The notes: generated by a model not told the origin, from the letters alone. A stretch of DNA of 64,000 nucleotides from Leucoraja erinacea (GCF_028641065.1 NC_073400.1:29574001-29638000), one strand, 5' to 3'. Positions 3,841 to 58,243 are shown, numbered from the stretch's first letter. Numbers and translations: made by a program.

Positions 3841-3898
3841 ATGGTCTCCTTGGATAAAACTATGTGGATTCCAATGCTGCTCATTTATTCCCTGCCCG
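3841..3898 (+). CDS. Gene A exon 1: leader MVSLDKTMWIPMLLIYSLP
   Basis: ATG, hydrophobic core and phase-1 donor G|GTAAGT; homologous to the leader at 19971. Confidence 0.85.
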
Positions 3899-6800
3899 GT
3901 AAGTAACAGCTTGATTTGGACGGTCATGTGACCAGACTCTACGGGAAGTACGAGATAGTCACAACGTGCTGGAGTAACTCAGCGGGACAGGCTGAAGAAA
4001 AGTCTCGACCCGAAATGTCACCCATACCTTCTATCCAGAGATGCTGCCTGTCCCTCTGAGTTACTCCAGCATTTTGTGTCTATCTTCGGTGTAAACCAGC
4101 ATCTGCAGTTCCTTCCTTTACATATGCTGGAAATACTTAGCAGGTGTGCCGAGAAAAAGAGTTACCCTTTCAGATCAGAGATCCTTCGACCTAAAACCTA
4201 ACTCTATCTCTCCCCACAGATGCGCCCTGACCACCTGATTATTTTTTTGTTTTTGTGTTAGATTTTGTTAACCTCCGTAGTTTTATTTTGATATTCATTT
4301 TGGTGATCAGAATGTATCTGGGTCTTGTGCACCATTTCTGCAGTGGAGATAGTTAAATGCTTGCAGATGTAAAGATAACTGAACAATATTGGGGCGTGGA
4401 TCAAGAAAGAGGAACTCAGCGGGTCAGCCAGCATCTGTGTATGTGAAGAGGACCCTGTATCGGGACTGAGCAAGGGAGGCAGGAAAGGTTGAATCAGGAT
4501 CGGCAGGTGGGCTTGTGTGGGAGGAGAACACCAGAGGGTGTGAATTACCCAAAATTGGAAAATGTAATGTTTGTACCATTGAGTTTTGAACTATCAATCA
4601 ACATCTTGTGTTCTGCTTGTGTATTCTCTATCAAACACATCCTCTTCATCCAGTTCCATCTTCCTCAACCAGCCCCAACCCTCCCACCCATTAGTACATC
4701 TATATGTTGCCAAACATATCTGTCCCCTCTCAGTCCTGATGCAGGGTCTCGATCTGAAAGAACGACTTACACTTTTTTGCCTTCAAACCTCCATGACCCA
4801 CTGAGTCCTTCCAGTGTGCTGTTTGTTGTTCCAGATTCCAGCATCTGCAATTCTCTTTTGTCTCAATATTAGAGTGTGGTCTTCCAATCTCCTCCTGTCT
4901 CCATCACTGTGCCACACATAAATCATGGCCGCCAATGTATCCGACAGCACAAAGTGACAGTGAATGAAAAACAGAGACAATTACAAGTGACTGGGACAGT
5001 GGCACAGCGGTGCCTTACAGTACCAGAGATCTGGGTTCGATCCTGACTAAGGGGTCTGTCTATATGGAGTTAGTACCTTCTCCCTGTGACCGCATGGGTT
5101 TTTTCCCAGTCCTCTGGTTTCCTCCCACACCCCAAAGACACATGGGTTTGTAGGTTAATTGGACTCTATAAATAGGGAATATGGACTATGTAAATTGTCC
5201 CTAGTGTACAAGATACTAGGTCAGCACGGACAAGTTGGGCCGAAGGGCCAGTTTCCATGCTCCACCTTAAACTAAACTAAACTAAAGTAACAGTGTCAAA
5301 GTGCAAAGGGACCCTTTCTATTCATGAAACATTGTTTTATTGCTTGCTTGCACTCACTAACAGCAGCCAAGCAATAATGCCAAGACAATTGTCTCCATTT
5401 TACAACACTTCCTCTTATTTAAAGTTCAGATGTTGTTTGACGTCCAGTTCCTCTTGGGCTGTGGGTTGCTCTTGCAATGTAGCCATTTCCTTCTTGTTCT
5501 TGGACGTCAACTATGCATATTTGTCAAAGTCATCAGCATGCAATATTAATAATTTATTGTTACCAAGTAAATTCTTTTTTTCAATGTTATCACTGATGCT
5601 CAGATGCAGGTGAAGGCCAACATTGACTGTCTTCATTCACCAGATCATTTCCGGTAATCTAGTATCATTGCTATACTAGTTTAGTTTAGTTTAGTCCAAT
5701 GAAGTCCAATTATTGATTGTTCACGGGGGTAAATAGGAGGCCAGGACTGCGCTCTAGCTAGTGAGAGGATGGGTCAGTTGCCTGATGACAGTTGGGAAGA
5801 AAACTGTCTCTGAATCTAGAGCATTGGGTTCAAACTTCTGTCCCTCGTGCCTAATGGTAGACAGGTAAAGAAGGAGTGACTGGGATGAAACTGCTCCATG
5901 ATTATGCTGGTGGCCTTGCAAGGCAGCGTGAAGTGTAGGTGACTATTTCCTAGTTTATAGATGGGAAAGATGGCAAATAAGGTTTACCCTCCATAAAACA
6001 GGTCAACGATATACGTGCATTTGGGGGATAAGGTTGTTGTAGGGATCCACAAGCCTCAGTACTCATCAATAGACAATAGGTGCAGGAGTAGGCCATTCGG
6101 CCCTTTGAGCCAGCACTGCCATGTAAGATTATTGTAAGATTATTGTAAAATTATTTTAAGATTATTAAGGGTTTGGACACGCTAGAGGCAGGAAACATGT
6201 TTCCGATGTTGGGGGAGTCCAGAACCAGGAGCCACAGTTTAAGAATAAGGGGTAAGCCATTTAGAACGGAGATGATCAGCCATGATCACATTGAATGGCG
6301 TTGCTGGCTCGAAGGGCCAAATGCCCTACTCCTGCACCTATTGTCTATTGTCCATTGTTTATTGAATGTGATCATGCTTGATCATCCCCAATCAGTACCC
6401 CGTTCCTGCCTTCTCCCCATATCCCCTGACTACTATCTTTAAGAGCCCTATCTAGCTCTCTCTTGAAAGTTTCCAGAGAATGGGCAGAGAATTCCACATA
6501 CTCACAACTCTCTGTGTTTCATTGTCTCCGTTCTAAATGGCTTACCCCTTATTCTTAAACTGTGGCCCCTGGTTCTGGACTCCCCCAACATCGGGAACAT
6601 GTTTCCTGTCTCTAGCGTGTCCAAACCCTTAATAATCTTACATGTTTCAATAAGATTCCCTCTCATCCTAAGTTCCAGAGTATACAAGCTTAGCTGCTCC
6701 ATTCTCTCAGCATATGACAGTCCCGCCATCCCGGGAATTAACCTTGTAAACCTACGCTGCACTCCCTCAATAGCAAGAATCATCTATGTAGATAAATGTA

Positions 6801-9800: not shown

Positions 9801-12800
9801 CATCCTCAGACCCGAAACTTCACCCATTCCTTCTCTCCAGAGATGCTGCCTGTCCCGCTGAGTTACTCCAGCATATTTTGTCTATCTTTAATTGTCTTTT
9901 ATTTCCTTTTCTCAACAGAACCTGAACCTAATCCTGGATCGTCAACAACAACAGTAGCACTTACTTCAACTACAAAAGTAACATCCGAAAACAATGATCA
10001 TGCGCCCAGTTCCTCTGACAGGTATAATTTTCACTTGCTTAAGTTTTGATTGGCCTTGCTTTTCAATATGAGAGGTGGAGACACAAGGAACTGTTGATCC
10101 ATACATAGATACATAGATGGATAGACAATAGTGCAGGAGAAGTCCATTCTGCCCTTCGAGCCAGCACCGCCATTCAATGTGATCATGGTTGATCATCCAC
10201 AATCAGTACCCTGTTCCTGCCTTGTCCCCATATCCCTTGATTCCGCTAGCCCTAAGAACTATGTCTAATTATCTTTTGAATGTATCCAGTGAATCATCCT
10301 GCACTGCCTTACGAGGTAAAGAATTCCCCAGATTCACAACTCCCTGGGTGAAAAGTTTTCCTCAACTCAGTTCTAAATGGCCTACCCCTTATTCTTAAAC
10401 TGTGGCCCCTGGTTCTGGACTTCCACAACATCGAGAACATGTTTCCTGCATCTCGCGTGTCCAATCCCTTAATGATTTTATATGTGTCTATAAGATACCC
10501 TCTCATCCTTCTAAATTCCAGTGAATACAAGCCCAGACGCTCCATTCTTTCATCATATGACAGTCCCGCCATCCCGGGAATTAACCTGGCTGGATGCTGG
10601 AACCTTGAGTAGAACACAAAGTACTGGAGTAACTCTAGGTTGTCGAGGGTGGCATGGTGGTGCAGCGGTAGAGTTGCTGCCTTACAATGCCAGAGAGGCA
10701 TAATCAAGGACCACTCACCCCGGTCACTCCCTCTTCTCCCCTCTGGCAAGATGTATGGAGGTTTGAAAATTCACACCTGCAGAGTCAGGGACATTTTCTT
10801 CCCAGCAGTTACCAGGCAACTGAACCATCCCCTCACCAGCTAGAGAGCGACCCTGACCTCCCATCTACCTCATTGGAGACCTTCCAACTATCTTTAATCA
10901 GACTTTATTGGACTTTATCTTACACTAAACATTCAACCCTTTAATCACAAATCTATATGCTGTGACAGCTTGATTGTAATCGTGTCTAGTCTTTTCGCTG
11001 ACTGGATAACACACAACCAAAAGCTTTTCACTGAACCTCGATACACGTGACAATAATAAGCTAAACTAAATTAACGAAACAACAGTTAAACTTGGCAGGA
11101 CATTGACACCCACCACTAGCCACATCTCCCCATCTCCACCCCTTTCTGCTTTCTGCAGAGACCGTTCCCTCCACATCTCCCTGGTTAACTCATCCCTTCC
11201 CACCCAAACTTCCCCGTCCCCAAGTACTTTCACCTGCAACTGCAGGAGATGCAACACCTGTCCCTATACCTCCCCCCTCGAATGCATCCAAGGACCCTGA
11301 CAGTCTTTTCAGGTGAGGTAGAGGTTCACTTGCAGCTCCTCCAACCTCATCTACAGTTGCAGGTGTGGACTCCTATATATCGGCAAGAATACGCACAGGC
11401 TTGGCGATCGTTTCACTGATCTCCTTCGCTCAGTCCGCTTAAACCTACCTGACCGTCCGGTGGTGAACACTTTAACTCCCCCTCCCATTCCCACGCTTAC
11501 ATTTCTGTCCTGGGCCTCCTCCTTTATCAGCGAAAATTAGGGGTAACAGCACCTCGTATTGGGCAGCTTCCACCCCAGCTGTATGAATATTGACTTCTCC
11601 AACTACAAGTAACCCTTGCTTTCCCTGACTCCATCCCATTCCCTTTCCAGTACTCCGACCAGTCTGACTCTGCCCAATTATATTTTATCTTTGTTTATTT
11701 TGTTGTTACCGTCTCCCAGCTAACAATGATCTATTCTACATTTTCCTTGATCTCCACCCCCTTTGTTTCATTTTCACACCTTACACTTCCTTATCTCTGT
11801 ATCTCCTTCTCCCCTGAAGGAGGGTCTCAATCCCAAATGTCATCCATTCCTTCTCTCCAGAGATGCTGCCTCTCCCGCCGAGTTACTCCAGCATTTTGTG
11901 TCTATCTTCTTCAGTTTTATACCAGCATCTGCAGTTCCTTCCTACACTTATTGACTGTCCACTGGTTTTGAACAAGGGGTGTTTCCTTTGTAAATCTGTA
12001 AGCTGTGAGCATTTGTAAACCAATCAGCAGATATATCGACCACGGACAATGCCACTGGCCAGATCTCACACACAATTAGTTTAGTTTTACTTTAGTTTAG
12101 AGATACAGCATGGTAACAAATCCTTCGTTCCTCCGAGTCCACGCTGTCCGTCGATCACCCTTTTATATTAGATCTATGTGATCCCGCTTTTTCATCCACT
12201 CGCTACAAATTAAGGACAATTTACCAAGGCCAATTAACCCACAAACCCGCACGTCTTTGTGATGTGGGAGGAAACCGGAGCACCCGGAGGAAACCCACTT
12301 CATCACAGGGAGAATATGCAAACTCCTTACAGACAGCACCTGTAGTCTGGATTGAACCTGGGTCTCTGGCTCTGTAAGGCATCAACTCCATGCTGCGCTA
12401 CTGTTGGGTTGAGTTGGGTTTATTCTTTATCCAACATCACAATCATTGGTCGTTATCGCACTGCTGTTTGTGGAACTTGCTGTGGGCAGATTGGCTTTGG
12501 TGTTTACCACATTACAGCAATGTGTGCACTCCATTGACTGGGCTTGACTTATCCTGAGCTCATGAAAGATACCCTGCAGATGTTAGACTTTTGTTCTTTA
12601 CCAAAGGATAGGAATCAATGATGAAACAAGAGTAACCTTTTTGCTTTCTCTGTCCCATAGACCCATAATTTGGCTCGGTATTGCTGGAGTTCTTCTCGTG
12701 GTGATATTTGCTGGTCTACTTTGGTGCCTAATGTGTAGACAAAGGAGTGAGTTTCTATGTTTCCTTCATCCTTTCATGATGTATGTGATCATTTCCTGCA

Positions 12801-14520
12801 GAGAGGGAGAGAGATACAGCATGGAAACAGGCCCTTTATCAACCATCTCTTTATTCCAGTCCTACAATAATCTTATCCAGTCTGAAGAAGGGTCCCGGCC
12901 TGAAATGTCACCCACCCTTTTCGTCCAGAGATGCTGCCTGATCCATTGAGTTACTACTTTGTATCTATCTTTGGTGTAAACTAGCATTCTTAACAGTCAT
13001 TCCTAACTGTCACTGTTTGTCGTTGTCACTTGCGGGGGCGGAGCACCAAGGCAAATTCCTTGTATGTGAATACTTGGCCAATAAACTTATTCATTAATTC
13101 ATTAATCTGCAGGTCCTTTCTACACACTAATTTTATTCAACTTTGTTCTCTCCATGTTGTTATCAATTCCCCCAAGATTCTACCCCTCGCCTACACACTA
13201 GGGGCAATTTACAGTGGGAATTAACCTACAGGCGTGCATGTCTTTAGGATGTAGGGGGAAACCGGAGCACCCAGAGGTAACCCACCTAGTTGGGCTTGTG
13301 GTTCTCATGAATAAAAGTGTAGGAAGGAACTGCAGATGCTGGTTATACACCTAAGACAGATTGAAGATGCTGGAGTAAATCAGCAGGATAGGCATCTCTG
13401 GAGAGAACGGTCTGAAGAAGGGTCTCAACCTGAAACGCCATCCATTTCTTCTCTCCGGAGATGCTGCCTGTCCCACTAAGTTACTCCAGCATTTTGTGTC
13501 CATCTTCGGTTTAAACCAGCATCTGCAGTTCCTCCCTACTCTATATGCATCAAGATGGCTGGTTAAAAATGTCCCTGACATGTTCTTTCAATGTTAACAT
13601 TGTGTTTTCCAGAATCAGAAGGGAACAAACCTCCCGGAGCAAATAACAATGAAATGCAGGTAAAGACGGCAAAGTATGAATTCTCCGTGTATTGAGAACT
13701 TACAAAATTCTGTAATCCAACCTCACTAATCAAGTCACTAATCTGCTTCAATGGTTCTATGGTTCCTTTATCATCAAACGCATCAAGATGCATCAAGGTT
13801 ATTTTATGCATACAGATCAGACGATTATTTCAAAGGAACAGGGTTCTAATTTTGGATGATCAGCCATGATCACATACACAGCAGCTCGTTCCATACACCC
13901 ACCACACTTTGTGTAGAAAGTTACCCCTTGGGTTCCTATTAAATCTTTCCCCCCCTCATCATAAACCTATATCATCTGGTTCTCGATTCTTCTACTCTAG
14001 GCAAAAGGCTCTGTGCGTCTACCCGATCTTTTCCTCTCATGATTTTGTACACCTCTATCAGATCACCCCTCATCCTCCTGCACTCCAAGCGTCCTGGCCT
14101 GCTCAACCTCTCCCTATAGTTCACGCCCACGAGTCTGGGCAACATCCTTGCAAATCTTCTCCGCACCCTTTCCAACTTGACAGCATCTTTCCTATGACAT
14201 GGTGACTAAAACTGAACACAAATCATCGGACAAACCTTGGTTCCTCTTTTGTTTTTCAGGGTTTGCCAGCAGGAAAACGGAGCATCGTTTATGCAACACT
14301 GTCAGACATTCGAAGCAACAAGGAAGCTGCCCATTGTTCTAATCAATATCAAACTGTGTATGCAGAAGTGCAAGTTCAAAGCAAATCGACAGGGTCTCAC
14401 TCCAGTACTGGGGAGGACAATGTCACCTATTCAGAAGTTACATCTCAAAGCGTCAGCCAGATTGCCCGTCAGAAAGCTCCTTCTCCTGTGCAGAGTATTT
14501 ATGCCACTGTGACTTCTTAG
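3841..14520 (+). CDS. Gene A: CD300/pIgR-like (CMRF35/MDIR-like) inhibitory receptor, spliced join(3841..3898,8229..8549,9919..10021,12661..12746,13613..13659,14260..14520), 291 aa
   Basis: All six exons have GT/AG sites with compatible phases (1,1,2,1,0). The total is 876 nt, open to TAG. Domain order: signal peptide, V domain with KYWC-x6-C extra disulfide, S/T stalk, uncharged TM, Tyr-motif tail. Confidence 0.88.
6066..6780. mobile_element. Nested CR1-type LINE 3' fragments (a plus-strand piece inside a minus-strand copy)
   Basis: GVQRRFTRLIPGMAGLSY.ER...SRTRGHSLRIRG in both orientations. Confidence 0.75.
8229..8549 (+). CDS. Gene A exon 2: Ig V-set domain, CD300/pIgR type
   Basis: ITIDCHY...KYWCHGWSHWC...GRWSITDN..GIFTVTV...DTGWYSCGI; acceptor ttctcag, donor G|GTACGT; overlaps ORF 8270..8587. 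Confidence 0.95.
8556..8762 (-). mobile_element. V-SINE (HE1-like) fragment immediately 3' of the gene A V-exon donor
   Basis: Reverse complement of the SINE head and core. Confidence 0.8.
8972..9728 (+). mobile_element. GC-rich non-coding interspersed repeat with (AACTTG)n tail, probable non-autonomous retroelement
   Basis: Related copies at ~42575-43000(-), ~46858-47556(-), ~60115-60645(+) and ~63590-64000(-). Confidence 0.6.
9919..10021 (+). CDS. Gene A exon 3: Ser/Thr/Pro-rich stalk EPEPNPGSSTTTVALTSTTKVTSENNDHAPSSSDR
   Basis: Pyrimidine tract plus caacag acceptor; donor AG|GTATAA; phase 1 to phase 2. Confidence 0.85.
10105..10590 (-). mobile_element. CR1-type LINE 3' fragment
   Basis: RLIPGMAGLSYDERMERLGLYSLEFRRMRG in ORF 10309..10749. 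Confidence 0.8.
11105..11945 (+). mobile_element. Degenerate Penelope-like element (GIY-YIG region plus pLTR)
   Basis: CNCRRCNTCPY, LLYIGK...RLGDRF; ends in the ccagcatctgcagttcct pLTR sequence. Confidence 0.75.
12661..12746 (+). CDS. Gene A exon 4: transmembrane segment PIIWLGIAGVLLVVIFAGLLWCLMCRQR
   Basis: Acceptor tcccatag, donor A|GTGAGT; about 23 uncharged hydrophobic residues followed by basic residues. Confidence 0.9.
13613..13659 (+). CDS. Gene A exon 5: juxtamembrane cytoplasmic exon KSEGNKPPGANNNEMQ
   Basis: ttttccag acceptor, CAG|GTAAAG donor; its phase 1 to phase 0 structure joins exons 4 and 6 in frame. Confidence 0.8.
13875..14220 (-). mobile_element. CR1-type LINE fragment
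   Basis: ERVRRRFARMLPRL...YRERL...RMRGDLIEVYKIMRG. Confidence 0.75.
14260..14520 (+). CDS. Gene A exon 6: cytoplasmic tail with IVYATL, TVYAEV, VTYSEV, SIYATV (ITIM/ITSM)
   Basis: gtttttcag acceptor; corresponds to ORF 14263..14520; four Tyr motifs match the ITIM or ITSM consensus. Confidence 0.9.
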   Translation, partial: GLPAGKRSIVYATLSDIRSNKEAAHCSNQYQTVYAEVQVQSKSTGSHSSTGEDNVTYSEVTSQSVSQIARQKAPSPVQSIYATVTS

Positions 14521-19970: not shown

Positions 19971-20028
19971 ATGGGGTCTGCATCTAAAACGATGTTGGTG
20001 CCAATTCTTCTCATTTGTTTCTTGCCCG
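19971..20028 (+). CDS. Gene B exon 1: leader MGSASKTMLVPILLICFLP
   Basis: Same length (58 nt) and phase as the gene A leader; donor G|GTGAGT. Confidence 0.85.
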
Positions 20029-26000: not shown

Positions 26001-27027
26001 CTCCTCCCCTTCCCAGCTCTCCCTCAGCCCTCGGGCTTCTCCTCCTCCTAACCCTAACCCCCCACCAGTCTGAAGAAGGGTTTTGGCCCGAAACGTTGCC
26101 TATTTCCTTCGCTCCATAGATGCTGCTGCACCCACTGAGTTTCTCCAGCATTTTTGTGTACCTGGGATTTTCCAGCATCTGCAGTTCCTTCTTAAACATC
26201 TCTTGACTCTTGACTTGGACGTAAGCATGAAAGGGTTCTTGGGGAAAAAAGAGGTACCTTAAATTTAGTTGCGTCTGTTTGGGTAACTATGGTAGGGTGA
26301 AGACTATTCCATGCTTTAATTGTGCGGGGTTACTCCATGGAGCAGCCAGCAACTCTGGATAGAAGAAATTGGGTGACGTTTCGGGTAGAGACCCTTCTTT
26401 ACCCTCCCTCTGGTTTTAGTGTTTTTAGTTTAATTTAAAGATACAGCGTGGAAACAGGCCCTTCGGCCCACCGAGTCCACGCCGACCACCGATCACCTGT
26501 ACACTAGTTCTATCCCACACATTAGCGGAGTAAGTCAAGAGTCAAGAGTGTTTTGTTCACTCACGTCCCAGTTAGAACAATGAAATCCTTACTAGCAGCA
26601 GCACAACAGAATATGTAAACATAGTACTCTGTAAACAATGTTATAAACGAGAAAACAGAACGGNNNNNNNNNNNNNNNNNNNNNNNNNNNNNNNNNNNNN
26701 NNNNNNNNNNNNNNNNNNNNNNNNNNNNNNNNNNNNNNNNNNNNNNNNNNNNNNNNNNNNNNNNNNNNNNNNNNNNNNNNNNNNNNNNNNNNNNNNNNNN
26801 NNNNNNNNNNNNNNNNNNNNNNNNNNNNNNNNNNNNNNNNNNNNNNNNNNNNNNNNNNNNNNNNNNNNNNNNNNNNNNNNNNNNNACGTATCTCCTCAAA
26901 AACCTGACACAAAAAAGCGGAGATTTTTACAATTTCCGTAGCGATTTATCTTAGGAGTTCAGAAATCCATTCCTTGGTCAATTATTTCCCCAGATTTTGA
27001 ATAAATCTCTCTCCCCACCCCTCCCCC

Positions 27028-27067
<40 letters not shown>

Positions 27068-30000
27068 CACCTCTCTCTCCTTCTCTCCCCCACCTCTCTC
27101 TCTCGTTCCCTCATCTCCGTCTCCCTCCCCCCCCCCCCCCCCCTCTCTCCCCCCCCCCTTCCCTGTACCCCCCTCCTTCCCTGCCCTCCCCCCCTCCCTC
27201 CCTCTTCCCCCCTTCTCTCTCTGCCCTCACTCTCTAACCCCCCCCCCCCCTTCCTCTCTAGACGCGCCTGCGAGTTGGGGGCTATGCGTCAGTAGATAGG
27301 GCGGTTGTGGGGTAAAAGGAGCAAATGAATAATATTAATATATTGACAAGGGGGGGTTAGTTAGCGTGTGTGCGAGGGGGTAGTTAGTGTGTGTGGGGGT
27401 GGTTAATGTGTGTGACGCCGCATGCCACTCCCCCCCCCCCCTCTCCCCTCGCAACCGCACGTTGGGGGTACATACACAACGGGTCTCCACTTGGTCTAGT
27501 TACGCTTCAAATTCTCAAATTGACAAGAGGTCCGTTTTGTTTAAAATTTAGATGTTTATTTTGTTAGTTCACTAATCCTCGTGGGTAGAATGTTGGTCAA
27601 CAGCGCTCCCGCAATGAGTAATCATTTACTTCTCATTTTGTTTTGCCTCTGTTGTGCTTTTGTCTAATTCAGCAAGGCCCAGCCTTAACCCTGATGCTGT
27701 TGTGAAACTGATTGTGAGTGAGAGGGGATCACTATCCAGAATCCCATATATTTTCCTGGACGTATTTTCTCACTCGGTCATTAAAGCGAGCCATTTAGTT
27801 GGTAGCTATAGTGAGGTAATTTGCCGAATATTGTACTCTGTGGTCTCCTTCCATTCACAACTGCTGGATCTTCTGGGAAGTCACCAGCCGACACTAAGGC
27901 CGGGAGATGCCGCTCCCAGCAGCGTGACGAGCGATAGAAACGCCGGCAATGCTGAGGGGGCAGAGACAATGTTGGTTTGGAAGATAGACACAATATACTG
28001 GAGTAACTCAGCTGGTCAGACAGCATCTATGGAACTAAGGGATAGGTGCTGTTTCGAGATCTAGACTCTTCTACAGAGTCAGGGGAAATGGAAGAGGTAT
28101 AGACGGTTGTGTAGAGAGATATAGAACAAATGAATGAAAGATATGTAAACAAGTAACAATGGTAAAGGAAACAGGCCATTGCTGTGCGGTGAGTGAGAAC
28201 TAGTTACAGACAATGAGATTCAACAAGAAGCTGGTGCAACTTGGGTAGGGGAGGGATGGACAGAGGGGGGGATGTAAGGTTTACTTGATATCAATATTCA
28301 TACCATTGAGGTGTAATTTGCCGACGGGAAATATGAGATGTTGTTTCCTACCACTAGGTTGGAGATGGCAGAGACGTTTCCAATTGAAACGAGGGCAAGT
28401 CCATTCAGTGATGGATGATCTGGTCCAGTGTTGGTGCGGGGGTGAATGTTGTCCAACACACCCCTCATCATTCCGAATATTCAGCTGATTTTTCCTGTTC
28501 ATTTTCAGAAGATTTGACCTCTCAGTTTCAGGTGCGGTGTGGGGGAAGGAACATGTAAGAGGAGTTGTGGGAAGAGCGATCACAATCGATTGTCACTATG
28601 AAGCAAAGTACCGCTCACACACAAAATACTGGTGTCAAGGGTGGACCCGCCATTGTATAGTTGTATTGGAAACAAATGGGCAACACGGACGGAATGGAAG
28701 AGCGTCAATCACCGATAACCCGGCACGAGGAATATTTACCGTGACTGTGGAGGATCTTCGCTCTGGAGATACTGGATGGTACAACTGTGGAATTACTACA
28801 TCTGGCTACGATCCATTGTTTAACATTTATCTCCAAGTATCTGACGGTACGTTTCGCAGCGATTGACTTGACGTCTCCACTGAAATGCCTGATCCATGTT
28901 TTCTCCGGGAAGGGTCAGGGCAGCACCGATATCCCGAGGCTCCGCAGCAGTGCAGAGACCTGCGGGGAGCGGGCGGGGGTCGGGAAACCCCACTCATGTT
29001 GCTCTCACCCAGTGCCGGCTCTGTCCCGCTCAGCACATTTCCCTGCCTCTGAACTGTATGAAATGTCACCCTGTCAGAGGTTTGCATTCCCACTAAAACT
29101 AATAATCCGACAGATCAGGTAGAAACAAGTGGTCTGGTCTGAATACCTGGAGAATCATAAACAGGGAATCAGTCCCGTGAGTTCAACAGACTGCATTCAA
29201 TACTCCCGGGGCAGGCCAGCCCGCACCCCGCCCCCACCTCAGGGACCATACACCCTCTCCCCACCCAGCGGTCTCTCTCCCTCTATCCCGTCAATGCGCC
29301 CCCACCCCCAGCAGCCACTCACCACTGACCACCCACCGCCCGGCAGCCAGCCAGCCTCTCCACCCGGCCCAATCTCGGTGGAAATTTGAGTAAAGCAATC
29401 CTAATCAGACCTTTCAGGAAACTCCCGGCGACCTCCAGCTTCCCCGAGTTTCTGGGATTCTCAGACTGACAATATCTCTCGCTGTCTCCACCCCGATATC
29501 AGCATCAGTGGGTTCCCTTCCTGTTGCAGGTCACTTAATCCAAGCACAACTATAGCCTCTCTCTATAGCCACCGAACATTGGACAGGTGTACGACACGTG
29601 AACAAAACCATAAGTGCTGGAAGAACTTAGTGGGTCAGGTAGCATCTGTGGAGGCAATGGACAAAACCAACTCGAGTCTGAAGAAGGGTTTCGGCCCGAA
29701 ACGTCGCCTATTTCCTTCGCTCCATAGATGCTGCTGCACCCACTGAGTTTCTCCAGCATTTTTGTGTACCTTCGATCTTCCAGCATCTGCAGTTCCTTCT
29801 TGAACACTCGAGTCGTGACCCTCCTTCAGACAGACGGAATGAGGGAGGAGAAAACTGGAATTGAGAGATGGGAACGGCACNNNNNNNNNNNNNNNNNNNN
29901 NNNNNNNNNNNNNNNNNNNNNNNNNNNNNNNNNNNNNNNNNNNNNNNNNNNNNNNNNNNNNNNNNNNNNNNNNNNNNNNNNNNNNNNNNNNNNNNNNNNN

Positions 30001-33000: not shown

Positions 33001-34443
33001 CCTGCTCTCCAAGAAATAATCACCTAGCTTGCTCAACCTTTCCCTATACATCAGTCCCTCGAGTCCCGGCAACATCCTCGTTAATCTTCTCTGCACCCTT
33101 TCCAGCTTGACAAAATCTTTCCTGTAACATGGCGACCAGAAATGCACACAATACCCTCAATGTGATGAGGTTCCAGGGTTACGCAGAATGACATCTGATC
33201 ACATAGGATTTAAGGCACAGAAAAGATCAACTGAACTGGTCCCATGCTGGTGTTTACATACCACTCGTCACTTCTCCCATCTTTTTTTATCTAACTTTAT
33301 CAACGCTAGACACAAAATGCTGGAGTAACTCAGCGAGTCAGGCAGCATCTCTGAAGAACATGGATAGGTGAAGTTTCGGGTCGAGATCCTGGACGGTGGA
33401 ATTTCCCAGGTGAACTACCTGGGCTCTGTTGCTGTACCCTGCTCCATGCAGAGATTTCACAGCAATCAGGCTATGAATGTTTCCAACACGAACAAGTCTG
33501 TTTCCTCCCACTGATTCTGTATCTTTCCCCCTTTGCTCAGTTACACGATATGGAATGTGGGACGCTGGCTGTACTTCGCTCTGCTTGGGATCTGCAGCAT
33601 CTCAGTCTCATTGTTCACAAGTATAAGGAAGGTATGTTTTGCGGAGATCATCAGAATCGCTGAATGCTTCCAAATGCTGTCCATTAATACCTTCAAACAT
33701 GCTGATAAAATAAAACAAACGAAAAGCGTTTAGATAAAGTACTTCACAAATATAGGCCAAACCAATGCTCTACGAAGATGATATCAATTGGTCTTGACAA
33801 GATGTTTGTGTGCAGAATGAACTGAAGTGTTTGACGTAGATGTTGTAGTGTCATTGAATCAGAGAAATACAACTGGGAAACAGGCCCTTTGACCCACTGT
33901 AACAAACGCAGACCATCTTATCTGAACCCAGTTCCCTCTCCTCTACTTTCAGTTTGAAGAAGGGTCCCGACCTGAAATGTCACCCATCCTTTTTCTCCAG
34001 AGATCGTGCCAGACTCGCTGGGTTACTCCAGCACTTTGTGCCGATCAGGCCATTGATCACCCGTACGCATTAGTTCGATGTTATCCCATTCTCTCATCCC
34101 AACTCCCAACACACTAGGGGAAATTCACATTGGCCAATTAACCTGCAAACCCACAAGTCTTTGGGAGGTGGGAGGAAACCGGAGCTCGCGGAGGAAACCC
34201 ACATGGCCACAGCGAGAACATGTAAACTCCACACAGATAGCATCAAAGTCAAAATCCAAGCAAATTCTTGGACGCTGTGAGGCAGCAGCTCTATCAGCTG
34301 CATCACTGTGCCAATTGGAAGCAGAATTCTGTTGTTAGTGGCCTTGTGAAATACAGCACAATTCCCAGAGTCAATTAATCTGATGACTTCTAAGTTTTTT
34401 TTTGCAGGGACCCATTGAACCAAAACCTCACAGCTTGCCGTAG
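19971..34443 (+). CDS. Gene B: two-Ig-domain (V + C2) activating-type CD300/MDIR-like receptor, join(19971..20028,28526..28846,30690..30995,32193..32295,33541..33631,34408..34443), 304 aa
   Basis: Phases 1,1,1,2,0 are compatible and the 915 nt are open to TAG. Caveat: N-gaps in introns 1 and 2 could hide exons or join two genes. Confidence 0.78.
21031..25203 (-). mobile_element. Degenerate DIRS1-like tyrosine-recombinase retrotransposon in gene B intron 1
   Basis: Minus-strand motifs: RT (IIIDLISLNKSVEYIHFKMET, ASIDMEDA, PNGLTSA, LDDILI ~23110-23450), RNase H (DASTLGWG ~22780), methyltransferase-like PPFCLI/VPDRPTQPWFP (~22180-22265) and YR C-terminus (WLKQV...PHST ~21310-21370). CCGAAGT is repeated at both ends. 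Many frameshifts. Confidence 0.8.
25252..26198 (+). mobile_element. Penelope-like element with inverted 5' pLTR
   Basis: GIY-YIG ORF 25679..25990 (IYCIRCSRCQLIYIGETKRRLGDRFAEHLRS) flanked by oppositely oriented copies of the pLTR/hammerhead unit. Confidence 0.85.
26664..26885. other. Assembly gap (222 N)
   Basis: Run of N. Confidence 1.
26886..27499 (+). mobile_element. Possible non-autonomous Helitron-like repeat with internal (CT)n/poly-C
   Basis: Ends in ...ccacttggtCTAG followed by T; low-complexity interior; no coding evidence. Confidence 0.3.
28526..28846 (+). CDS. Gene B exon 2: Ig V-set domain, CD300/pIgR type
   Basis: ITIDCHYEAKYRSHTKYWCQGWTRHC...DTGWYNCGI; 321 nt like gene A; same splice-site context; ORF 28537..28866. 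Confidence 0.95.
29674..29708 (+). ncRNA. Minimal hammerhead-ribozyme-like motif (Penelope pLTR type)
   Basis: CUGAAGA-AGGGUUUCGGCCC-GAAA-CGUC: conserved core boxes, near-palindromic stem II, palindromic ACGU stem III and a GUC cleavage triplet. Confidence 0.55.
29881..30054. other. Assembly gap (174 N)
   Basis: Run of N. Confidence 1.
30690..30995 (+). CDS. Gene B exon 3: Ig C2-type domain (FcRL/PECAM-like GSLPIRYTW motif)
   Basis: EPVSVPVL...GGSVTMSCKSERGSLPIRYTWY...YYCKASNNNGTESS; acceptor ttcccacag, donor G|GTAAGT; phase 1-1. Confidence 0.92.
32193..32295 (+). CDS. Gene B exon 4: stalk EHKVTERMMTTPFASTVKRSNESQNDSTRSTCTE(C)
   Basis: Acceptor resembles the gene A stalk acceptor; same length (103 nt) and phase 1 to 2; donor GTACAA is weak. 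Confidence 0.75.
33541..33631 (+). CDS. Gene B exon 5: TM with arginine, YTIWNVGRWLYFALLGICSISVSLFTSIRK
   Basis: Long pyrimidine tract plus cag; donor AAG|GTATGT; lies within ORF 33533..33733. Confidence 0.88.
34408..34443 (+). CDS. Gene B exon 6: short tail GPIEPKPHSLP*
   Basis: Poly-T tract plus gcag acceptor, phase 0, TAG at 34441-34443. Confidence 0.65.
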   Translation, partial: GPIEPKPHSLP

Positions 34444-35098
34444 AAGGCAGAATGAAGATCCACTGGTGATAGTGACTGAGAAACAACTCTCCAACAAGAC
34501 CAAATGATCATTATTATTTTGAATGAATGAATGATTGAAATAATTAATTAATTAATACTTTATTGTCACGTGTGACAAGTCACAGTGAAATTCTTTGCTT
34601 GCTAACCCAAGGTATGCAAATAGTCGCCCATAAAGGGCATTGACAAAGTGTTTTTCATTTTGCTTTCATAATAGACTGCACAGAATTAATGCTTCTTCTG
34701 CTAAAATTATTAACTTAGTTTACACAATATTCACTCAGTAAAGGTGCCATTTAAACAATGTTGCTAGCCTTTATAGCAATGACTTATTATTTTGTGTTGT
34801 GTAGCATGACATTGCAGTTATGTGGAATAAATTGTATTCAATCCTGGAAATGCCTCATGGTTTTAACTGTGAAGAATATTTAGAAGAGGGAAACTATAAG
34901 CTATGACATCCCATCAGATCAAATGTTCTGGAAGTACTTTTTCTCATGAGAACATCACTGTAATATACTTTGCTGAGCTGTTTTCAAGTCAAGTCTGTCA
35001 TTCTTATGTGCACGTATGGTGAGGTGCAGATACAATGAAAATCACGCTTGTGGCAACATCACATACACGTAGACACATAAAAATATAAATGATACATA

Positions 35099-45554: not shown

Positions 45555-45720
45555 TAGACCACAGCTAACAAGGTTTTCACCAAAACCACAGCTGACAATG
45601 TTTTTTTTTTTCACATAGACCACAGCTAACACTGTTTTTATTCATCTCGATTACAGCGAACATTTTTTTTCCATGTAGACCACAGCTAACACTGGTTTGT
45701 TTCACCTAGACCACAGCTCA
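45555..45720 (+). repeat. Degenerate minisatellite with unit ~tagaccacagctaaca
   Basis: About 5 imperfect copies. Confidence 0.7.
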
Positions 45721-53040: not shown

Positions 53041-53080
53041 ATGGACTTTGTATTTCTTTATTTCATGATCACCATTTCGG
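53041..53080 (+). CDS. Gene C exon 1: leader MDFVFLYFMITIS
   Basis: ATG, hydrophobic run and phase-1 donor G|GTAAGT. Confidence 0.8.
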
Positions 53081-56000
53081 GTAAGTGCCTGCAATTGCTG
53101 TTGGCTGCATATTGGTACATGATAATAGATAGATTAGGTTTCAGTGGAACTAAGGATGATTGGGAGAAGTTGGCTTGCCTAATGATAAGATTGTTCACAT
53201 CAACAGTGGGGCGACACGGTGGCGCAGCGGTAGAGTTGCTGCCTTACAGCACCAGAGATCCGGGTTCAATCCTGACTATGGTTGCGGTCTGTATGGATTT
53301 TGTACGTTCTCCTCGTGACTCCAAAGATGTACATATTTATGTCAATTGGCTTGGTATAATTGTAAATTGTCCGTACTGTGTGTAGGATAGCGCCCGTGTG
53401 CTCGATTAGCTGGTCGGCGTGGACTCGGTGGGCTGACGAGCCAGTTTCTGCGCTGTATCTCTAAACTAAACTAAACTAAGTTTGCTTGTATGGATGTGAA
53501 ATCATACAGTCTCCATTATCCAACCTCTCTAATCTGCAATGTATATTGTTCACAGAAGATCAAACATACCCAACTGGATGATCGAATCTGAGTGTCCGAC
53601 CCCTCTTTGTACTTGTGGGAGGTTGATGCACACAAGTCGGTCCTCTTGCCTCCTACCTTACGATAGTGACTGCATCAAAAATCTCATGATTGTCTGCAAA
53701 TTGTTTGGAAATTCTCTGACGATGTTTCAAGTCATCCTTGTTTCCTTCTACTTTGTGCAGCATCTGTTCGTGATAGATTGCTTTGAATTTTCTTTCCAAA
53801 TAAATAAAGCCATTTTAAGCATTTTAATTCTGAGCACACTTATCCGTTATCTATACTTTTTAAATTGATTTCGGATTCACTAACTGGGCTGGATGCCAAC
53901 CCAAACATGTCGCTTATCCTTCTCCACAGATGCTGCCTAACCCGTTGAGTTACTCCAGCGCTTCATGTCCTGTTCTGAGCCATATTGTGTCAGTATAAGG
54001 ATGGTTAGGTGATTGGGGAAAAAACAGGTGCAATATGACATGAAGAATTGTGAAATTATCTATCTTGACATGAAGCAAGGAAGAGCAGGATATTTTTTAA
54101 GAGCTTCCAGCGTGGTTAAAATTTGGCATTCCTTGCAATCCCGCTGTCCCGTTTGTGAAACCATTTCAATTATGTGAGGAGTTCAGGAAGTGAAAAAAAA
54201 GTACTTAAAGCAATGTATATATATCTTGGGATGAAGTAAGGACAAAATATTTTATTCAGCATGAAATTATGATCTGCCAGTTTCACATTTAAACAATCAA
54301 ATGAAACAGGTGTATCTTCCCGAGAGTAGGTGAATTGTGCACCAGAGGACATAGGTTTCAGGTCAAGGGGAAAAGATTTAATCTGAATTTGAGGGGTGAC
54401 TTTTTAATACATAGGGTGGTGGGTGTATGGAACAAGTTGCCAGAGGAGGTAGTTGAGGCTGGGACTATCCCAACATTCCAGAAACATAGACAGGTGCATG
54501 GATAGGACATGTTTGGAGGGATATTGCCAAACATGGGCAGTTGGGATTAGTGTAACTGGGACATTGGGCCAGTGTAGGCAAGTTGGGCCGAAAGGCCTAT
54601 TTTCATGCTATCACTCCATGCCTATGTTGGGTGAATTAGAATTTGGTGAGAGTTAGGACATTGGAAAAGCAGCCAACATAACCAAACACTTGTCTCACCC
54701 TAGTCATTCCTTTTTCCTGTTCCCATCCAGCAGAACGTACATAAGCTTGAAAGAATGCATCACCAGACTCAGGAACATCTTTCCCACTGTAATCAAGCTG
54801 TAGAACGGTCCTTCCATAAGCTAGGGTACTATCCTATTCACCTCTATCCCAATGCAGACATTGTACTTTGTCTATGAAACTGATGCACTACAATGCTTAG
54901 AACTATTCTGCACTCTGTATCTTCCCCTTTGCTCTATTTATTGTACCAGTAGGATGATCGCATTTATGTTATGTTTGTTTAGTGTAATTTAGTTTAGTTT
55001 ATTATGGTCACATGTACCGAGATACAGTGAAAAGCTTTTTGTTGCGTGCTATCCAGTCAGCCGATAGACTATACATGATTACAATTAAGTCATCCACAGT
55101 GTACACATACAGGATAAAGGAAATAACATTTAGTGCTTGGATTGCAGGCAAAACAAAGCTTTCCACTGTACCATGGTACACTTGACAATAATGGACCTAA
55201 ACATGGAGCAAATGTTTGAAAGTCCTTTAGTTCTCTAGTTATTAATCTGCCACAAATATTATGTTTTAATATGCATTTTATATTTTCACACTGAACAGTT
55301 ACAAATGCTGCTCTAAGTGGACCACGTGCAGTAAATGGAACAGAGGGGCAATCAGTCCATATCACATGTACATATAATCGATATTTCAGCCACTTCCCAA
55401 AGTACTGGTGCAAAGGCGGTGACTGGATGAGATGTACCATTCTGGTACAAACCATTGGCCATAACAAGACAACGTCTGATGGCAGAATATCCATTACAGA
55501 TGATACCAAAGTCGGGGAGTTCTCAGTCACCATGGAAAATCTCACCCTGAATGATGAAGGGTGGTATTGGTGTGCGATTAGGAGAATTGTCATTGACCTG
55601 CGAAGTCGTGTGAAACTTAATATCATTGAAAGTAAGGCTTGAATATACTTTTGTAAACGTCAATGCTCTTACATAGTCTGCTGTGTGAATTATTATATAG
55701 TTTGCGGTTTACATAGCTTTTAACAGAATTATTATTCTAGAAAGAAATTAAGATATTTTCTGTTGGAACATTAATTTTTAACTATGTTAATCTTAATTTT
55801 AATTTAACCTTTAATTTTTAATTTAAATTTAACCTGTAATTTAAGTTTTCATTTAATTTAATTTCAGTTCAACAGGAACATGGATAGAATAGGTTTGGAG
55901 GGATACGGGCCACCGCAGACAGCTGTGACTAGGGTAGCTGGGACATGTTGTGGGCAAGTTGGGCCGAAGGGCCTATTACTACGCTGTTTGACTCTTCCAT

Positions 56001-58243
56001 GGCTCTATGGCTCTAATTTAAATGTTAACCTAGTCATTGTACTAGTTTCACTGCCATCCTGGAGAGTTTCTCTCTGTATAACTCATTTACACCTAGCTCA
56101 CAGCTATCAATAGCCTGTCTCCTTGATCATCGTTACTGTTTTGCATATCTTTCATTCATTTGTTCTATATCTCTCTATATCACTGTCTATATCTCTCATT
56201 TCCCTTTCCCCTGACTCTCAGTCTGAAAAAAGGTCTTGACCCGAAATGTCACCTATTCATTTTCACCGGAGATGCTGCCTGACCCCGCTGGGTTACTCCA
56301 GCTCTCTGTGTCGATCTTTCTAAACCTCGTCAAAAACCTTGGTGTGATATTTGACTCAGCGTAGAAATTTGACAAACAAGTCAATGCTGTGGTAAAAGCT
56401 AGCTTCTTCCAGGTTCGGACGATAGCTAAAATAAAACAATTCCTCCATTTAGACGGCCTCGAAAAGATCATCCGCACATTTATCTCCTCCTGCCTCGATT
56501 ACTGCAACTCCCTTTACACTGGCATCAGCCTATCTTCCCTGTCCCGCCTGCAACTGGTCCAAAACGCCGCAGAGAGACTCCTGACGTGCACACGAAAAAG
56601 GGACCACTTCACCCCGATTCTGGCCTCTCTCCACTGGCTCCCTGTGCGGTACCGAATAAATTTCAAGATCCTTCTTTATGTTTACAAAGCCCTTAACGGG
56701 CTTGCTCCCACCTACATCAAAAGTCTTCTTACCCACCACACCACCTCCAGGTCCCTCAGATCGGCCGACTTAGGGTTACTGACCATCCCGCAGTCTAGGC
56801 ATAAGCTCAGGGGTGACCGCGCCATTGCGGTTGCAGCTCCTAGACTGTGGAAAAGCAGCATCCATCTTCCCATCAGAACTGCCCCCTCCATCGACTCAAA
56901 AGACTCATCGACTTAAAACTCATCTTTACTCTCAAGCCTTTCTTGACGTCCTCTGAGGGAGGGCTATATGTATGTATTTATGTATGTACTTAATCTATGA
57001 ACCAATGTTGTATAACGTTAGTACCTCCACCAATGTAAAGCACTTTGGTCAACGAGAGTTGTTTTTTAAATGTGCTACAGAAATAAAAGTGACTTGACTT
57101 GACTTAACTTCATATTAAACCAGCATCTGCAGTTCCTACCTACACATTACATTTTCACTTTTTGTTTGTGAACAAATTGATGGGTTAGATTAAACATGTT
57201 ATAGACATTTACCTGCACTACTAGCCAACAGTAACTGACCTCAATTTTAACAAGTCATCATTTACTTTTTCAATCACAGATCCGTCAACGTCAAAGGATA
57301 TCTGGTAAAGGCTAAATCTTTATAAAGTTATATCTTCTAAATACTTACACTATATCTGCATAGCTATAGTGATGAATACTTCTGTACAAGGGGTTATCAC
57401 TGCTTCTTGGTGGTTTCACTGGTCAATGTTTGTCTAGAAAGTTGGGGGAGAATGTGGAGAATGAAGGATTATTTATTTACGGTTTCAGAATCAAGGGGAA
57501 TATTATAGAACATGTAAAAGTGTACAATATGTGGCAGAGAATCAAGATGTTGGATTGCACTTTAGTTCAGATTAGTGATACAACGTGAAATTGATCCCTT
57601 GGCAACAAATGATCACCTGTATCCTTGTTCCATCCTATACCCAGTGGACCATTTACAGAAGTCTGAAGAAGTGGCCTGGCCCCAAATATTACCTATCTCT
57701 GAACTCCAGAGATGCTCCCTGACCCGCTGAGTTACTCCAGCACTTTGTGTCCCCAACAGTCTTGCCCAAGTAAATATGGGCGGCACTGTGGCGCAACGGT
57801 AGAGTTGCTGCCTTACACAACCTGGGTTCGATCCTAACTACGGGTGCTGTCTGTACAGAGTTTGTACGTTCTCCCGTGACCGTGTGGGTTTCCTCCGAGA
57901 TCTTCAGTTTCCTCCCACACTCCAAAGACGTACAGGTATGTAGGTAAATTGGCTTGGTGTAAATGTAAATTGTCCCTACTGTGTGTAGGATAGTTAATAA
58001 GTGGGGATCATTGGTCGGCGCAGACTCGGTGGGCCGAAGGGCCAGTTTCTGCACAGTATCTATATTGCTACAAATAATTGGACGCACATCCACCTGTACT
58101 CTTATTAAACGCCTTTGATTAAACTGTTTTGCCTCTTTCCTCTTAGGAAACATAATACTAACTACAATTTCATATGGAGCATTTTGCGTTGGATATTCTT
58201 TGCCATTCTGCTTGTCTGGGGTATCGTGACCACGAGAATGTAG
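53041..58243 (+). CDS. Gene C: single-V CD300-like activating-type receptor, join(53041..53080,55299..55631,57280..57304,58147..58243), 164 aa
   Basis: Phases 1,1,2 are compatible; 495 nt; leader, V domain, micro-stalk, Arg-containing TM, TAG. Confidence 0.8.
53208..53479 (+). mobile_element. V-SINE (HE1-like)
   Basis: ggtggcgcagcggtagagttgctgcc...gggttcaatcc head and (CTAAA)n tail. Confidence 0.8.
55299..55631 (+). CDS. Gene C exon 2: Ig V-set domain, CD300 type (LSGPRAVNGTEGQSVHITCTY...KYWCKGGDWMRC...DEGWYWCAI)
   Basis: The GP..V.G..G.SV.I.C.Y and KYWC-x7-C patterns are typical of CD300/pIgR; acceptor aacag, donor A|GTAAGG; ORF 55427..55642 is the 3' part. Confidence 0.95.
56327..57110 (+). 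mobile_element. L2-clade LINE 3' fragment in gene C intron 2
   Basis: NLGVIFDS, LDYCNSL, LQLVQNAA, TPILASLHWLPV..RI.FKIL; (GACTT)n tail. Confidence 0.88.
57280..57304 (+). CDS. Gene C exon 3: 25-nt micro-stalk exon NPSTSKDI(W)
   Basis: tttttcaatcacag acceptor, TG|GTAAAG donor; supplies the phase 1 to phase 2 link needed between the V and TM exons. Confidence 0.7.
57778..58062 (+). mobile_element. V-SINE (HE1-like)
   Basis: Head, core and tail match the family. Confidence 0.8.
58147..58243 (+). CDS. Gene C exon 4: TM with arginine, KHNTNYNFIWSILRWIFFAILLVWGIVTTRM*
   Basis: Pyrimidine tract plus tag acceptor; IW...RW..FA.L aligns with the gene B TM; TAG at 58241, splice donor at 58257. Confidence 0.85.

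What the first reader, a model, noticed from the sequence alone, without database searches (positions are those of the whole stretch)
3841..58243. Tandem paired activating/inhibitory CD300/pIgR-like receptor cluster in a probable cartilaginous fish
Seen: three same-strand genes reconstructed from splice phases. One has an uncharged TM and four ITIM/ITSM motifs (A); two have an Arg in the TM and short or no tails (B, C). A and B share nearly the same V domain. Established: this is the architecture of paired innate receptors (CD300, LILR, PIR), and a modular family with CD300-like V domains (MDIR) has been described in skate, so the family may be known even if this locus is not. Inference: A and B form a ligand-sharing inhibitory/activating pair. 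The ORF track shows only fragments and misses both leader exons of A and B, several small exons and the gene C TM.
Basis: partly seen in the sequence, partly recalled or inferred. Interest (0 to 1): 0.8.

Follow-up and report, generated by a model that had tools for sequence, protein, structure and literature searches.

The report
Little skate MDIR immune-receptor gene cluster
This stretch of little skate DNA holds three intact tandem genes of the already described MDIR family of innate immune receptors, one inhibitory type and two activating types; it is a correctly read but ordinary locus, and genes A and B are not a matched pair.

Summary
Three + strand genes can be built with canonical GT..AG at all 13 introns and no internal stop.
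- Gene A is 291 aa: one V domain, an uncharged TM and four ITIM/ITSM tyrosines.
- Gene B is 304 aa: V plus an FcRL-like C2 domain, an NxxR arginine TM and a 16-aa tail.
- Gene C is 164 aa: one V domain, an arginine TM and a 4-aa tail.

The window is little skate (Leucoraja erinacea). Gene A residues 1-161 are identical to its RefSeq protein XP_055510915.

The family is the known MDIR family of clearnose skate. Gene C is 84% identical end to end to a named MDIR, and gene B's V-C2 is 67% identical to MDIR2.

The pairing claim fails. V-A and V-B share only 72% of residues, which is the family baseline. V-B is sister to an ITIM-bearing paralogue elsewhere on the chromosome, and V-A groups with activating forms from other skates. 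An AU test rejects an A+B clade (p 0.0075).

Both assembly gaps lie in gene B introns. RNA reads over gene B were too few to confirm its junctions or continuity across the gaps.

The scan has already flagged neighbouring windows of this genome as MDIR clusters. Verdict: a new locus of a known kind, of low to moderate interest.

The parts
3841..3898 (+). Gene A exon 1: leader (MVSLDKTMWIPMLLIYSLP), donor GTAAGT, ends in phase 1
   Evidence: identical to residues 1-19 of P0057 and P0037
8229..8549 (+). Gene A exon 2: pIgR/CD300-type V domain with four cysteines, phase 1-1
   Evidence: Pfam V-set E 2.4e-10; PDB hits to pIgR and CLM-1/CD300f, 2.5e-19; 100% identical to P0057
9919..10021 (+). Gene A exon 3: Ser/Thr-rich stalk, phase 1 to 2. 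The RefSeq model P0057 reads through its donor to a stop at 10049.
12661..12746 (+). Gene A exon 4: uncharged transmembrane segment
   Evidence: 76% identical to the P0001 TM
13613..13659 (+). Gene A exon 5: small cytoplasmic exon (KSEGNKPPGANNNEMQ)
   Evidence: found by fuzzy match to the P0001 orthologue; frame checked
14260..14520 (+). Gene A exon 6: cytoplasmic tail with IVYATL, TVYAEV, VTYSEV, SIYATV, then the stop
   Evidence: 72% identical to the P0001 C-terminus
19971..20028 (+). Probable gene B exon 1: leader (MGSASKTMLVPILLICFLP), donor GTGAGT, ends in phase 1. Assigning it to B is an inference.
   Evidence: 95% identical to the P0189 leader. The 5' flank and exon align with the gene A leader region. 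No other Ig exon lies between it and V-B.
26664..26885 (.). Assembly gap 1, inside the leader-to-V intron of gene B
   Evidence: not filled or looked up
28526..28846 (+). Gene B exon 2: V domain. It sits on a 2,995-bp piece bounded by both gaps.
   Evidence: Pfam V-set 6e-12; 86% identical to the P0171 V
29881..30054 (.). Assembly gap 2, inside the V-to-C2 intron of gene B. Both flanks are purine-rich low-complexity sequence.
   Evidence: not filled or looked up
30690..30995 (+). Gene B exon 3: C2-type Ig domain, FcRL-like, phase 1-1
   Evidence: Pfam Ig_2 7e-7; PDB best hit FcRL5, then FcRL4 and CD22; 92% identical to the P0171 C2 and 90% to the P0037 C2
32193..32295 (+). Gene B exon 4: stalk, phase 1 to 2
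   Evidence: 97% identical to the P0037 stalk
33541..33631 (+). Gene B exon 5: transmembrane segment with the NxxR motif (IWNVGRW...)
   Evidence: 97% identical to P0037 and P0188. A few + strand RNA reads in X18, all with C>T at 33546.
34408..34443 (+). Gene B exon 6: short tail (GPIEPKPHSLP) and stop
   Evidence: matches the P0037 C-terminus with one change
53041..53080 (+). Gene C exon 1: leader (MDFVFLYFMITIS), donor GTAAGT
55299..55631 (+). Gene C exon 2: pIgR/CD300-type V domain of a separate subfamily
   Evidence: Pfam V-set 8e-19; PDB hits to pIgR and CLM-1, 3e-20; 95% identical to the P0200 V and 87% to the P0201 (MDIR) V
57280..57304 (+). Gene C exon 3: 25-nt micro-exon (NPSTSKDIW), phase 1 to 2
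   Evidence: needed to put the TM exon in frame
58147..58243 (+). Gene C exon 4: arginine-bearing TM (FIWSILRWIFFAILLVWGIV), 4-aa tail, stop
   Evidence: full-length gene C is 95% identical to P0200 and 84% to P0201

Best explanation
The window is part of the MDIR (modular domain immune-type receptor) gene cluster of the little skate. It carries three intact tandem genes on the same strand.

- Gene A encodes a type I membrane protein with one pIgR/CD300-type V domain, a Ser/Thr-rich stalk and an uncharged TM. Its tail has three ITIMs and one ITSM. By analogy with known ITIM receptors it should be phosphorylated on ligand engagement and recruit SHP/SHIP phosphatases that dampen leukocyte activation.
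- Genes B (V plus an FcRL-like C2 domain) and C (one V domain) have almost no tail. Each carries an arginine near the outer end of its TM. In B this is the NxxR motif, which in other vertebrates couples receptors to the ITAM adaptor FcR-gamma, so both should be activating.

The genes are built from exons in compatible phases, so domains are exchangeable. A and B are not each other's partners. B's V-C2 ectodomain pairs with an ITIM-bearing paralogue elsewhere on the chromosome, and A's V lineage occurs with activating TMs in other skates.

Shown here: the gene structures, homology and phylogeny. Inferred: signalling, adaptor use, ligands and expression.
For: Gene structures:
- All three are complete ORFs with GT..AG at all 13 introns.

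Species and orthologues:
- Gene A is 100% identical to L. erinacea XP_055510915 over residues 1-161, and the model's 8-aa intronic read-through end (YNFHLLKF, then the stop) also stands in the window.
- Gene A is 70.6% identical to the C-terminal unit of a Rhinoraja model, including TM and ITIM tail.
- Gene B is 84.6% identical end to end to Amblyraja XP_032898776, 305 aa.
- Gene C is 95% identical to an Amblyraja protein and 84% to 'Modular domain immune-type receptor' A0S0E7 of Rostroraja eglanteria.
- MDIR2 and MDIR5 are strong hits of the gene B orthologue.

Domain types:
- The V domains match pIgR and CD300f far better than rearranging V domains.
- The C2 domain matches FcRL5 best.

Pairing:
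- Tree and AU test.

Literature:
- NxxR TMs associate with FcR-gamma (PMC2413239).
- MDIRs are described as a multigene activating/inhibitory family in skate (PMC3031540).
Against: - No splice junction was confirmed by RNA. In four RNA runs the gene B exons had depth of 1.4 or less (V), 0.6 or less (C2) and 4.5 (TM, one run, all reads with a C>T difference).
- RefSeq annotates gene A only as a 169-aa protein that stops after the stalk exon. Nothing matching genes B or C came up from L. erinacea in the protein searches.
- The V-B exon lies on a 3-kb piece between two assembly gaps. Its placement, and the absence of a hidden exon, are not proven.
- Gene C's TM has SxxR, not NxxR.
- No adaptor, ligand or expression data were obtained.
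Confidence: 0.85

Rival explanations
1. A and B are a matched inhibitory/activating pair that arose from each other and see the same ligand through nearly the same V domain.
For: - The genes are adjacent and on the same strand.
- Their V exons are 84.6% identical in DNA, with dS only 0.125.
- Their leader exons and 5' flanks are homologous.
Against: - Protein identity is 72.2%, the family baseline.
- V-B is sister to the V of P0171 (99/90). V-A groups with P0037 and P0188 (96/91).
- The AU test rejects an A+B clade, p 0.0075.
- dN/dS is 1.49.
- B has a C2 domain that A lacks.
Confidence: 0.07
2. One or more of the three genes is not a working gene as modelled. Gene B may be mis-scaffolded or may have an extra Ig exon hidden in a gap. 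Gene A may mainly give the 169-aa secreted form that RefSeq annotates. B and C may be silent.
For: - V-B lies on a 2,995-bp piece between two gaps.
- RNA depth over the B exons is close to nil.
- The RefSeq model for A stops in the intron after the stalk.
- No L. erinacea protein matching B or C was found.
- V-V-C2 relatives exist (P0007, P0162).
- Earlier notes report damaged activating-type copies in the neighbouring window.
Against: - All ORFs are intact with canonical splice sites.
- End-to-end orthologues with the same architecture exist in other skates.
- V-B and C2 both have P0171 as their closest relative (86% and 92%), as expected for one duplicated unit.
- The tissues of the RNA runs are unknown, and only 5-25% of each run was read.
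Confidence: 0.15
3. Splicing can run from one unit into the next. The V and stalk exons of one unit would join the TM exon of a downstream unit, so one V domain could appear in both inhibitory and activating forms.
For: - The phases allow it: the A stalk ends in phase 2 and the B TM exon starts in phase 2.
- P0188, from an assembled contig, has an A-lineage V, an A-type stalk and a B-type TM/tail. Its junction residue is Ser, as AG+T would give.
- The P0188 TM/tail is identical to that of P0037 although the V domains differ (81%).
Against: - P0188 and P0037 may simply be separate genes, assembly chimeras or merged gene predictions. P0001 is clearly a merged model.
- No read evidence was obtained here.
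Confidence: 0.08

Closest known systems
MDIR family of clearnose skate (Cannon et al. 2006, Immunogenetics 58:362; UniProt A0S0E7, MDIR2, MDIR5)
   Same: - The host is also a skate (same order).
- Gene C is 84% identical end to end to A0S0E7.
- Gene B's V-C2 is 67% identical to MDIR2, and its TM is 56% identical to the MDIR5 TM.
- The same mix of V and C2 modules occurs, with charged-TM forms and ITIM forms.
- It is a multigene family.
   Different: - This is the genomic locus in another species, Leucoraja erinacea. The family was described from cDNA, as I recall it.
- Gene A's combination (single V, mucin-like stalk, four-tyrosine tail) has no named MDIR counterpart among the proteins retrieved.
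Mammalian CD300 (CMRF35-like) family
   Same: - A single V domain with the extra cysteine pair, then stalk and TM.
- Members with ITIMs and members with a charged TM and short tail.
- A tandem cluster.
- PDB matches to CD300f and CD300a at 1e-15 to 1e-20.
   Different: - The charged TM residue here is an N-terminal Arg of the NxxR type. From my own knowledge, CD300 activating members use a mid-membrane Lys or Glu.
- Gene B adds an FcRL-like C2 domain.
- Orthology and synteny were not tested.
Polymeric immunoglobulin receptor (pIgR)
   Same: The V domains give their best PDB matches to pIgR domains.
   Different: These genes have one V domain rather than the four matched stretches seen in the PDB pIgR chains (from my own knowledge, mammalian pIgR has five V domains). 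Their tails carry ITIMs or are nearly absent. Nothing suggests a transcytosis receptor.
FcR-gamma-coupled NxxR receptors (LILRA2, PIR-A, NKp46, GPVI, OSCAR, FcalphaR, Xenopus XFL; PMC2413239)
   Same: - Gene B's TM has the N-terminal NxxR motif and a short tail.
- Gene B's C2 domain is FcRL-like.
   Different: - The membrane-distal domain is a pIgR/CD300-type V domain, not C2.
- Gene C has SxxR.
- Adaptor association was not tested.

Membership tests
MDIR (modular domain immune-type receptors) | Sequence homology to the named MDIR proteins of Rostroraja eglanteria | tested here: met
   - Gene C is 84.1% identical over all 164 residues to A0S0E7 (P0201).
- Gene B residues 8-256 are 67% identical to MDIR2 (P0172).
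- The MDIR5 TM matches the B TM exon at 58%.
MDIR (modular domain immune-type receptors) | Modular ectodomains built from distinct Ig subfamilies, one to several per protein | tested here: met
   - A and C have V only; B has V plus C2.
- The V domains of A/B and of C fall in two clades separated with 100/100 support.
- Relatives with V-V-C2 and V-C2-V-C2 exist.
- The Ig-domain exons (three V, one C2) are phase 1-1, and the stalk exons of A and B both run from phase 1 to 2.
MDIR (modular domain immune-type receptors) | Forms with a positively charged TM residue and forms with cytoplasmic ITIMs | tested here: met
   B and C have Arg in the TM. A has four ITIM/ITSM motifs.
MDIR (modular domain immune-type receptors) | Large multigene family | tested here: met
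   - Three genes lie in this window.
- Further L. erinacea paralogues lie on the same 33.95-Mb record (P0159, P0171).
- Earlier notes describe neighbouring windows; I did not check those notes myself.
CD300 / CMRF35-like | Single pIgR-like V domain with a second disulfide (C-C' cysteines) | tested here: met
   - All three V exons show four cysteines in the pattern C...YWC-x6-C...Y-x-C.
- PDB matches to CD300f and CD300a at 1e-15 to 1e-20.
- That these cysteines form a disulfide is inferred from knowledge of the family.
CD300 / CMRF35-like | Orthology or conserved synteny with the mammalian CD300 locus | not tested
   No non-receptor flanking gene was found in the window, and no mammalian sequences were placed in the tree.
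pIgR | Several tandem pIgR-type V domains in one chain | tested here: not met
   There is one V domain per gene.
   Tree, AU test p 0.0075, 72% identity, and different domain architecture.
FcR-gamma-coupled NxxR receptors | NxxR at the N-terminal end of the TM, with a short tail | tested here: met
   Met for B (WNVGRW). Gene C has SILR in this species, although the Rostroraja MDIR orthologue has NIMR.
FcR-gamma-coupled NxxR receptors | Physical association with FcR-gamma | not testable with these tools
   This needs co-expression and co-immunoprecipitation.

The most novel reading that the evidence does not exclude
In the tandem MDIR array, the V and stalk exons of one unit can be spliced onto the TM exon of the next unit downstream. 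The phases match: the A stalk ends in phase 2 and the B TM exon starts in phase 2. One V domain would then be displayed either with its own ITIM tail or with a shared activating NxxR TM. The inhibitory/activating pair would be made by splicing rather than by gene duplication. The lead is P0188, which has an A-lineage V and an A-type stalk joined to a TM/tail identical to that of P0037, with the junction residue expected from such a splice.
Probability: 0.08. Interest if true: 0.7.

Novelty: new member of a known kind. Interest (0 to 1): 0.25.

Why it matters
The result gives exon-level models for three MDIR genes in the little skate. It includes a full-length inhibitory form of a gene that RefSeq annotates only as a truncated 169-aa protein. 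No L. erinacea protein matching the two activating-type genes turned up in the protein searches.

It also shows how the family is put together. Exons in compatible phases let V, C2, stalk and TM modules recombine. The same V lineage appears with inhibitory or activating anchors in different skates.

This is useful for annotating cartilaginous fish immune genes and for tracing the origin of paired receptors. It does not reveal a new kind of system.

Tried and rejected
- **RNA reads over gene B** (read laying on 28480-34460, four RNA runs). High-copy repeats took nearly all the reads. Exon depth was too low and no splice joint was listed, so the test was inconclusive.
- **Orthologue loci** (look-up of encoding contigs for P0037, P0188 and P0200). 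The orthologous loci, synteny and the origin of P0188 could not be checked.
- **Original MDIR paper and a review** (PMC3701310 and PMC2823954). Neither is held. What I say about the 2006 paper beyond PMC3031540 is from memory.
- **B leader search between 24000 and 28480**. It found only weak candidates. The leader at 19971 came from tblastn with P0189.
- **Direct V-to-TM splice for gene C.** It gives the wrong frame, so I rejected it. The 25-nt micro-exon restores the frame.
- **Rearranging Ig/TCR V segments.** TCR and antibody V domains match only at 1e-3 to 1e-8, against 1e-19 or better for CD300f and pIgR.
- **dN/dS above 1 between V-A and V-B.** It is not significant (Fisher p 0.17).
- **Joined models.** The spliced models were never sent to a search tool. 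Database searches were made exon by exon, by reference. The joined translations were built only in local scripts, for frame checks and for comparison with proteins already fetched.


Full report
**What is there**

The window is repeat-rich vertebrate DNA with two N runs, at 26664-26885 and 29881-30054. A pattern scan found exactly three Ig V-like open frames, all on the + strand. Pfam calls all three V-set, with E-values of 2e-10, 6e-12 and 8e-19. An open frame at 30.7 kb is an Ig_2/C2 domain. tblastn with about 200 family proteins found no further Ig exon on either strand.

**Species**

A search of protein representatives with the V-B exon gave 2,715 hits. One of them, P0057, is XP_055510915 'CMRF35-like molecule 1' of Leucoraja erinacea. 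It is identical to the window over leader, V and stalk. Its last eight residues (YNFHLLKF) are also present, translated from the intron after the stalk exon. The window is therefore little skate.

**Gene models**

I used orthologues as guides and checked every boundary in the sequence. All 13 introns are GT..AG and there are no internal stops.
- Gene A: 3841-3898, 8229-8549, 9919-10021, 12661-12746, 13613-13659, 14260-14520; 291 aa.
- Gene B: 19971-20028, 28526-28846, 30690-30995, 32193-32295, 33541-33631, 34408-34443; 304 aa.
- Gene C: 53041-53080, 55299-55631, 57280-57304, 58147-58243; 164 aa.

Comparison with proteins from other skates:
- A is 70.6% identical to the last unit of a merged Rhinoraja longicauda model (P0001), including TM, small exon and tail.
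- B is 84.6% identical end to end to Amblyraja radiata XP_032898776 (P0037, 305 aa).
- C is 95% identical to an Amblyraja protein (P0200) and 84% to P0201.

The spliced models were never sent to a search tool. Database searches used single exons by reference. The joined translations were made only in local scripts.

**Family**

P0201 is UniProt A0S0E7, 'Modular domain immune-type receptor' of Rostroraja eglanteria, the clearnose skate. MDIR2 and MDIR5 are strong hits of the gene B orthologue. PMC3031540 describes MDIRs as multigene activating/inhibitory families in skate, related to CD300, TREM, FCAR and pIgR, and cites Cannon et al. 2006. I could not read the original paper.

Matches among solved structures:
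- V-A and V-C match pIgR domains best, then CD300f/CLM-1 (about 2e-19 to 3e-20). NKp44, TIM and TREM2 come next.
- Antibody and TCR V domains match far more weakly.
- The C2 domain of B matches FcRL5 best, then FcRL4 and CD22.

**Signalling parts**

- The A tail has IVYATL, VTYSEV and SIYATV (ITIM consensus) and TVYAEV (ITSM consensus). Three of the four are kept in the Rhinoraja orthologue.
- The B TM reads IWNVGRWLYF..., an NxxR motif at its outer end, followed by a 16-aa tail.
- The C TM reads IWSILRWIFF..., followed by 4 residues. The Rostroraja orthologue has NIMR at that position.
- NxxR TMs of LILRA2, PIR-A, NKp46, GPVI, OSCAR, FcalphaR and Xenopus XFLs associate with FcR-gamma (PMC2413239).

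That A inhibits and that B and C activate is inferred from these motifs. It was not tested.

**The pairing claim**

V-A and V-B are 84.6% identical in DNA and 72.2% in protein, with dS 0.125, dN 0.187 and dN/dS 1.49. The excess over 1 is not significant. DNA similarity between the two loci is confined to the V exon and about 26 bases before it.

V-A is just as close to V domains from sawfish and stingrays. In a maximum-likelihood tree of 42 V domains:
- V-B is sister to the V of P0171 (99/90). P0171 is a 413-aa L. erinacea paralogue with an MDIR2-like ITIM tail.
- V-A groups with P0037 and P0188 (96/91), both of which have the activating TM.

Holding A and B together costs 47 log-likelihood units (AU p 0.0075).

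B's C2 domain is 92% identical to that of P0171. If B has an inhibitory counterpart, it is P0171 and not gene A.

**The gaps**

Both gaps are intronic in the gene B model.
- Gap 1 lies 6.6 kb after the leader and 1.6 kb before V-B.
- Gap 2 lies 1.0 kb after V-B and 0.6 kb before C2.
- No exon abuts a gap. The 'ORFs' that cross them are runs of X.

V-B therefore sits alone on a 2,995-bp piece. In favour of the given order:
- The orientation is the same throughout.
- The phases fit.
- V-B and C2 share the same closest relative.
- Both flanks of gap 2 are similar purine-rich low-complexity sequence.

A hidden phase 1-1 Ig exon cannot be excluded, and V-V-C2 relatives exist.

**RNA**

High-copy repeats took nearly all the reads.
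- Exon depth was at most 1.4 on V-B and at most 0.6 on C2.
- Depth on the TM exon was 4.5 in X18 only, in the orientation expected for a + strand RNA if the library is stranded in the usual way.
- All eight X18 reads at 33546 show C>T, which turns YTIW into YMIW. They may come from an allele or from a paralogue.
- No splice joint was listed.

This test is inconclusive.

**Annotation status**

No L. erinacea protein matching gene B or gene C appeared in either word search, although orthologues from other skates did. Gene A is present only as the 169-aa model.

**Earlier notes of this scan**

Neighbouring windows of the same genome were already read as little skate MDIR clusters. A note on this window pointed me to the gene B TM. 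My own searches reach the same family.

**Verdict**

This is a real, correctly reconstructed receptor cluster. It belongs to a known family, and the specific A/B pairing idea is rejected.

Noticed in passing
window 9919-10049: The RefSeq model for gene A (XP_055510915, 169 aa) reads through the stalk exon donor at 10021 and stops in the intron (..DRYNFHLLKF). It is either a secreted isoform or a truncated prediction. The full 291-aa ITIM form is open in the genome.
   Followed up: partly
P0188 and P0037 (proteins from other skates), compared with window 9919-10021 and 33541-33631: P0188 joins an A-lineage V and an A-type stalk to a TM/tail that is identical over 41 residues to that of P0037. 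The two V domains are only 81% alike. The junction residue Ser fits an A-type stalk exon (ending AG) spliced to a B-type TM exon (starting T).
   Followed up: partly
P0001 (Rhinoraja longicauda XP_078277136, 870 aa): This is a merged gene prediction: V-V-C2-V-C2-TM runs straight into another V-stalk-TM-ITIM unit. The compatible exon phases of this family make such chimeric models easy to produce, so database architectures need care.
   Followed up: partly
window 33546: All 8 RNA reads of run X18 on the gene B TM exon carry C>T, changing Thr to Met (YMIW, as in Amblyraja). They come from an allele or from an expressed near-identical paralogue.
   Followed up: no
window 29675-29800, 31480-31680, 33280-33480: High-copy interspersed repeats, SINE-like, have RNA depth of 200-900 in all four runs. 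Many copies occur across the window, including in the introns of all three genes.
   Followed up: no
window 38409-39872 (-), 47576-48945 (+), 25679-25990 (+), 3278-3669: Transposable element remnants are present. Two are reverse-transcriptase fragments (Pfam RVT_1). One ORF contains a GIY-YIG domain and may be Penelope-like, with a related copy just upstream of the gene A leader.
   Followed up: partly
window 27025-27228: A CT/C-rich low-complexity tract lies just after gap 1. Purine-rich tracts flank gap 2. These are the likely causes of the assembly breaks.
   Followed up: partly
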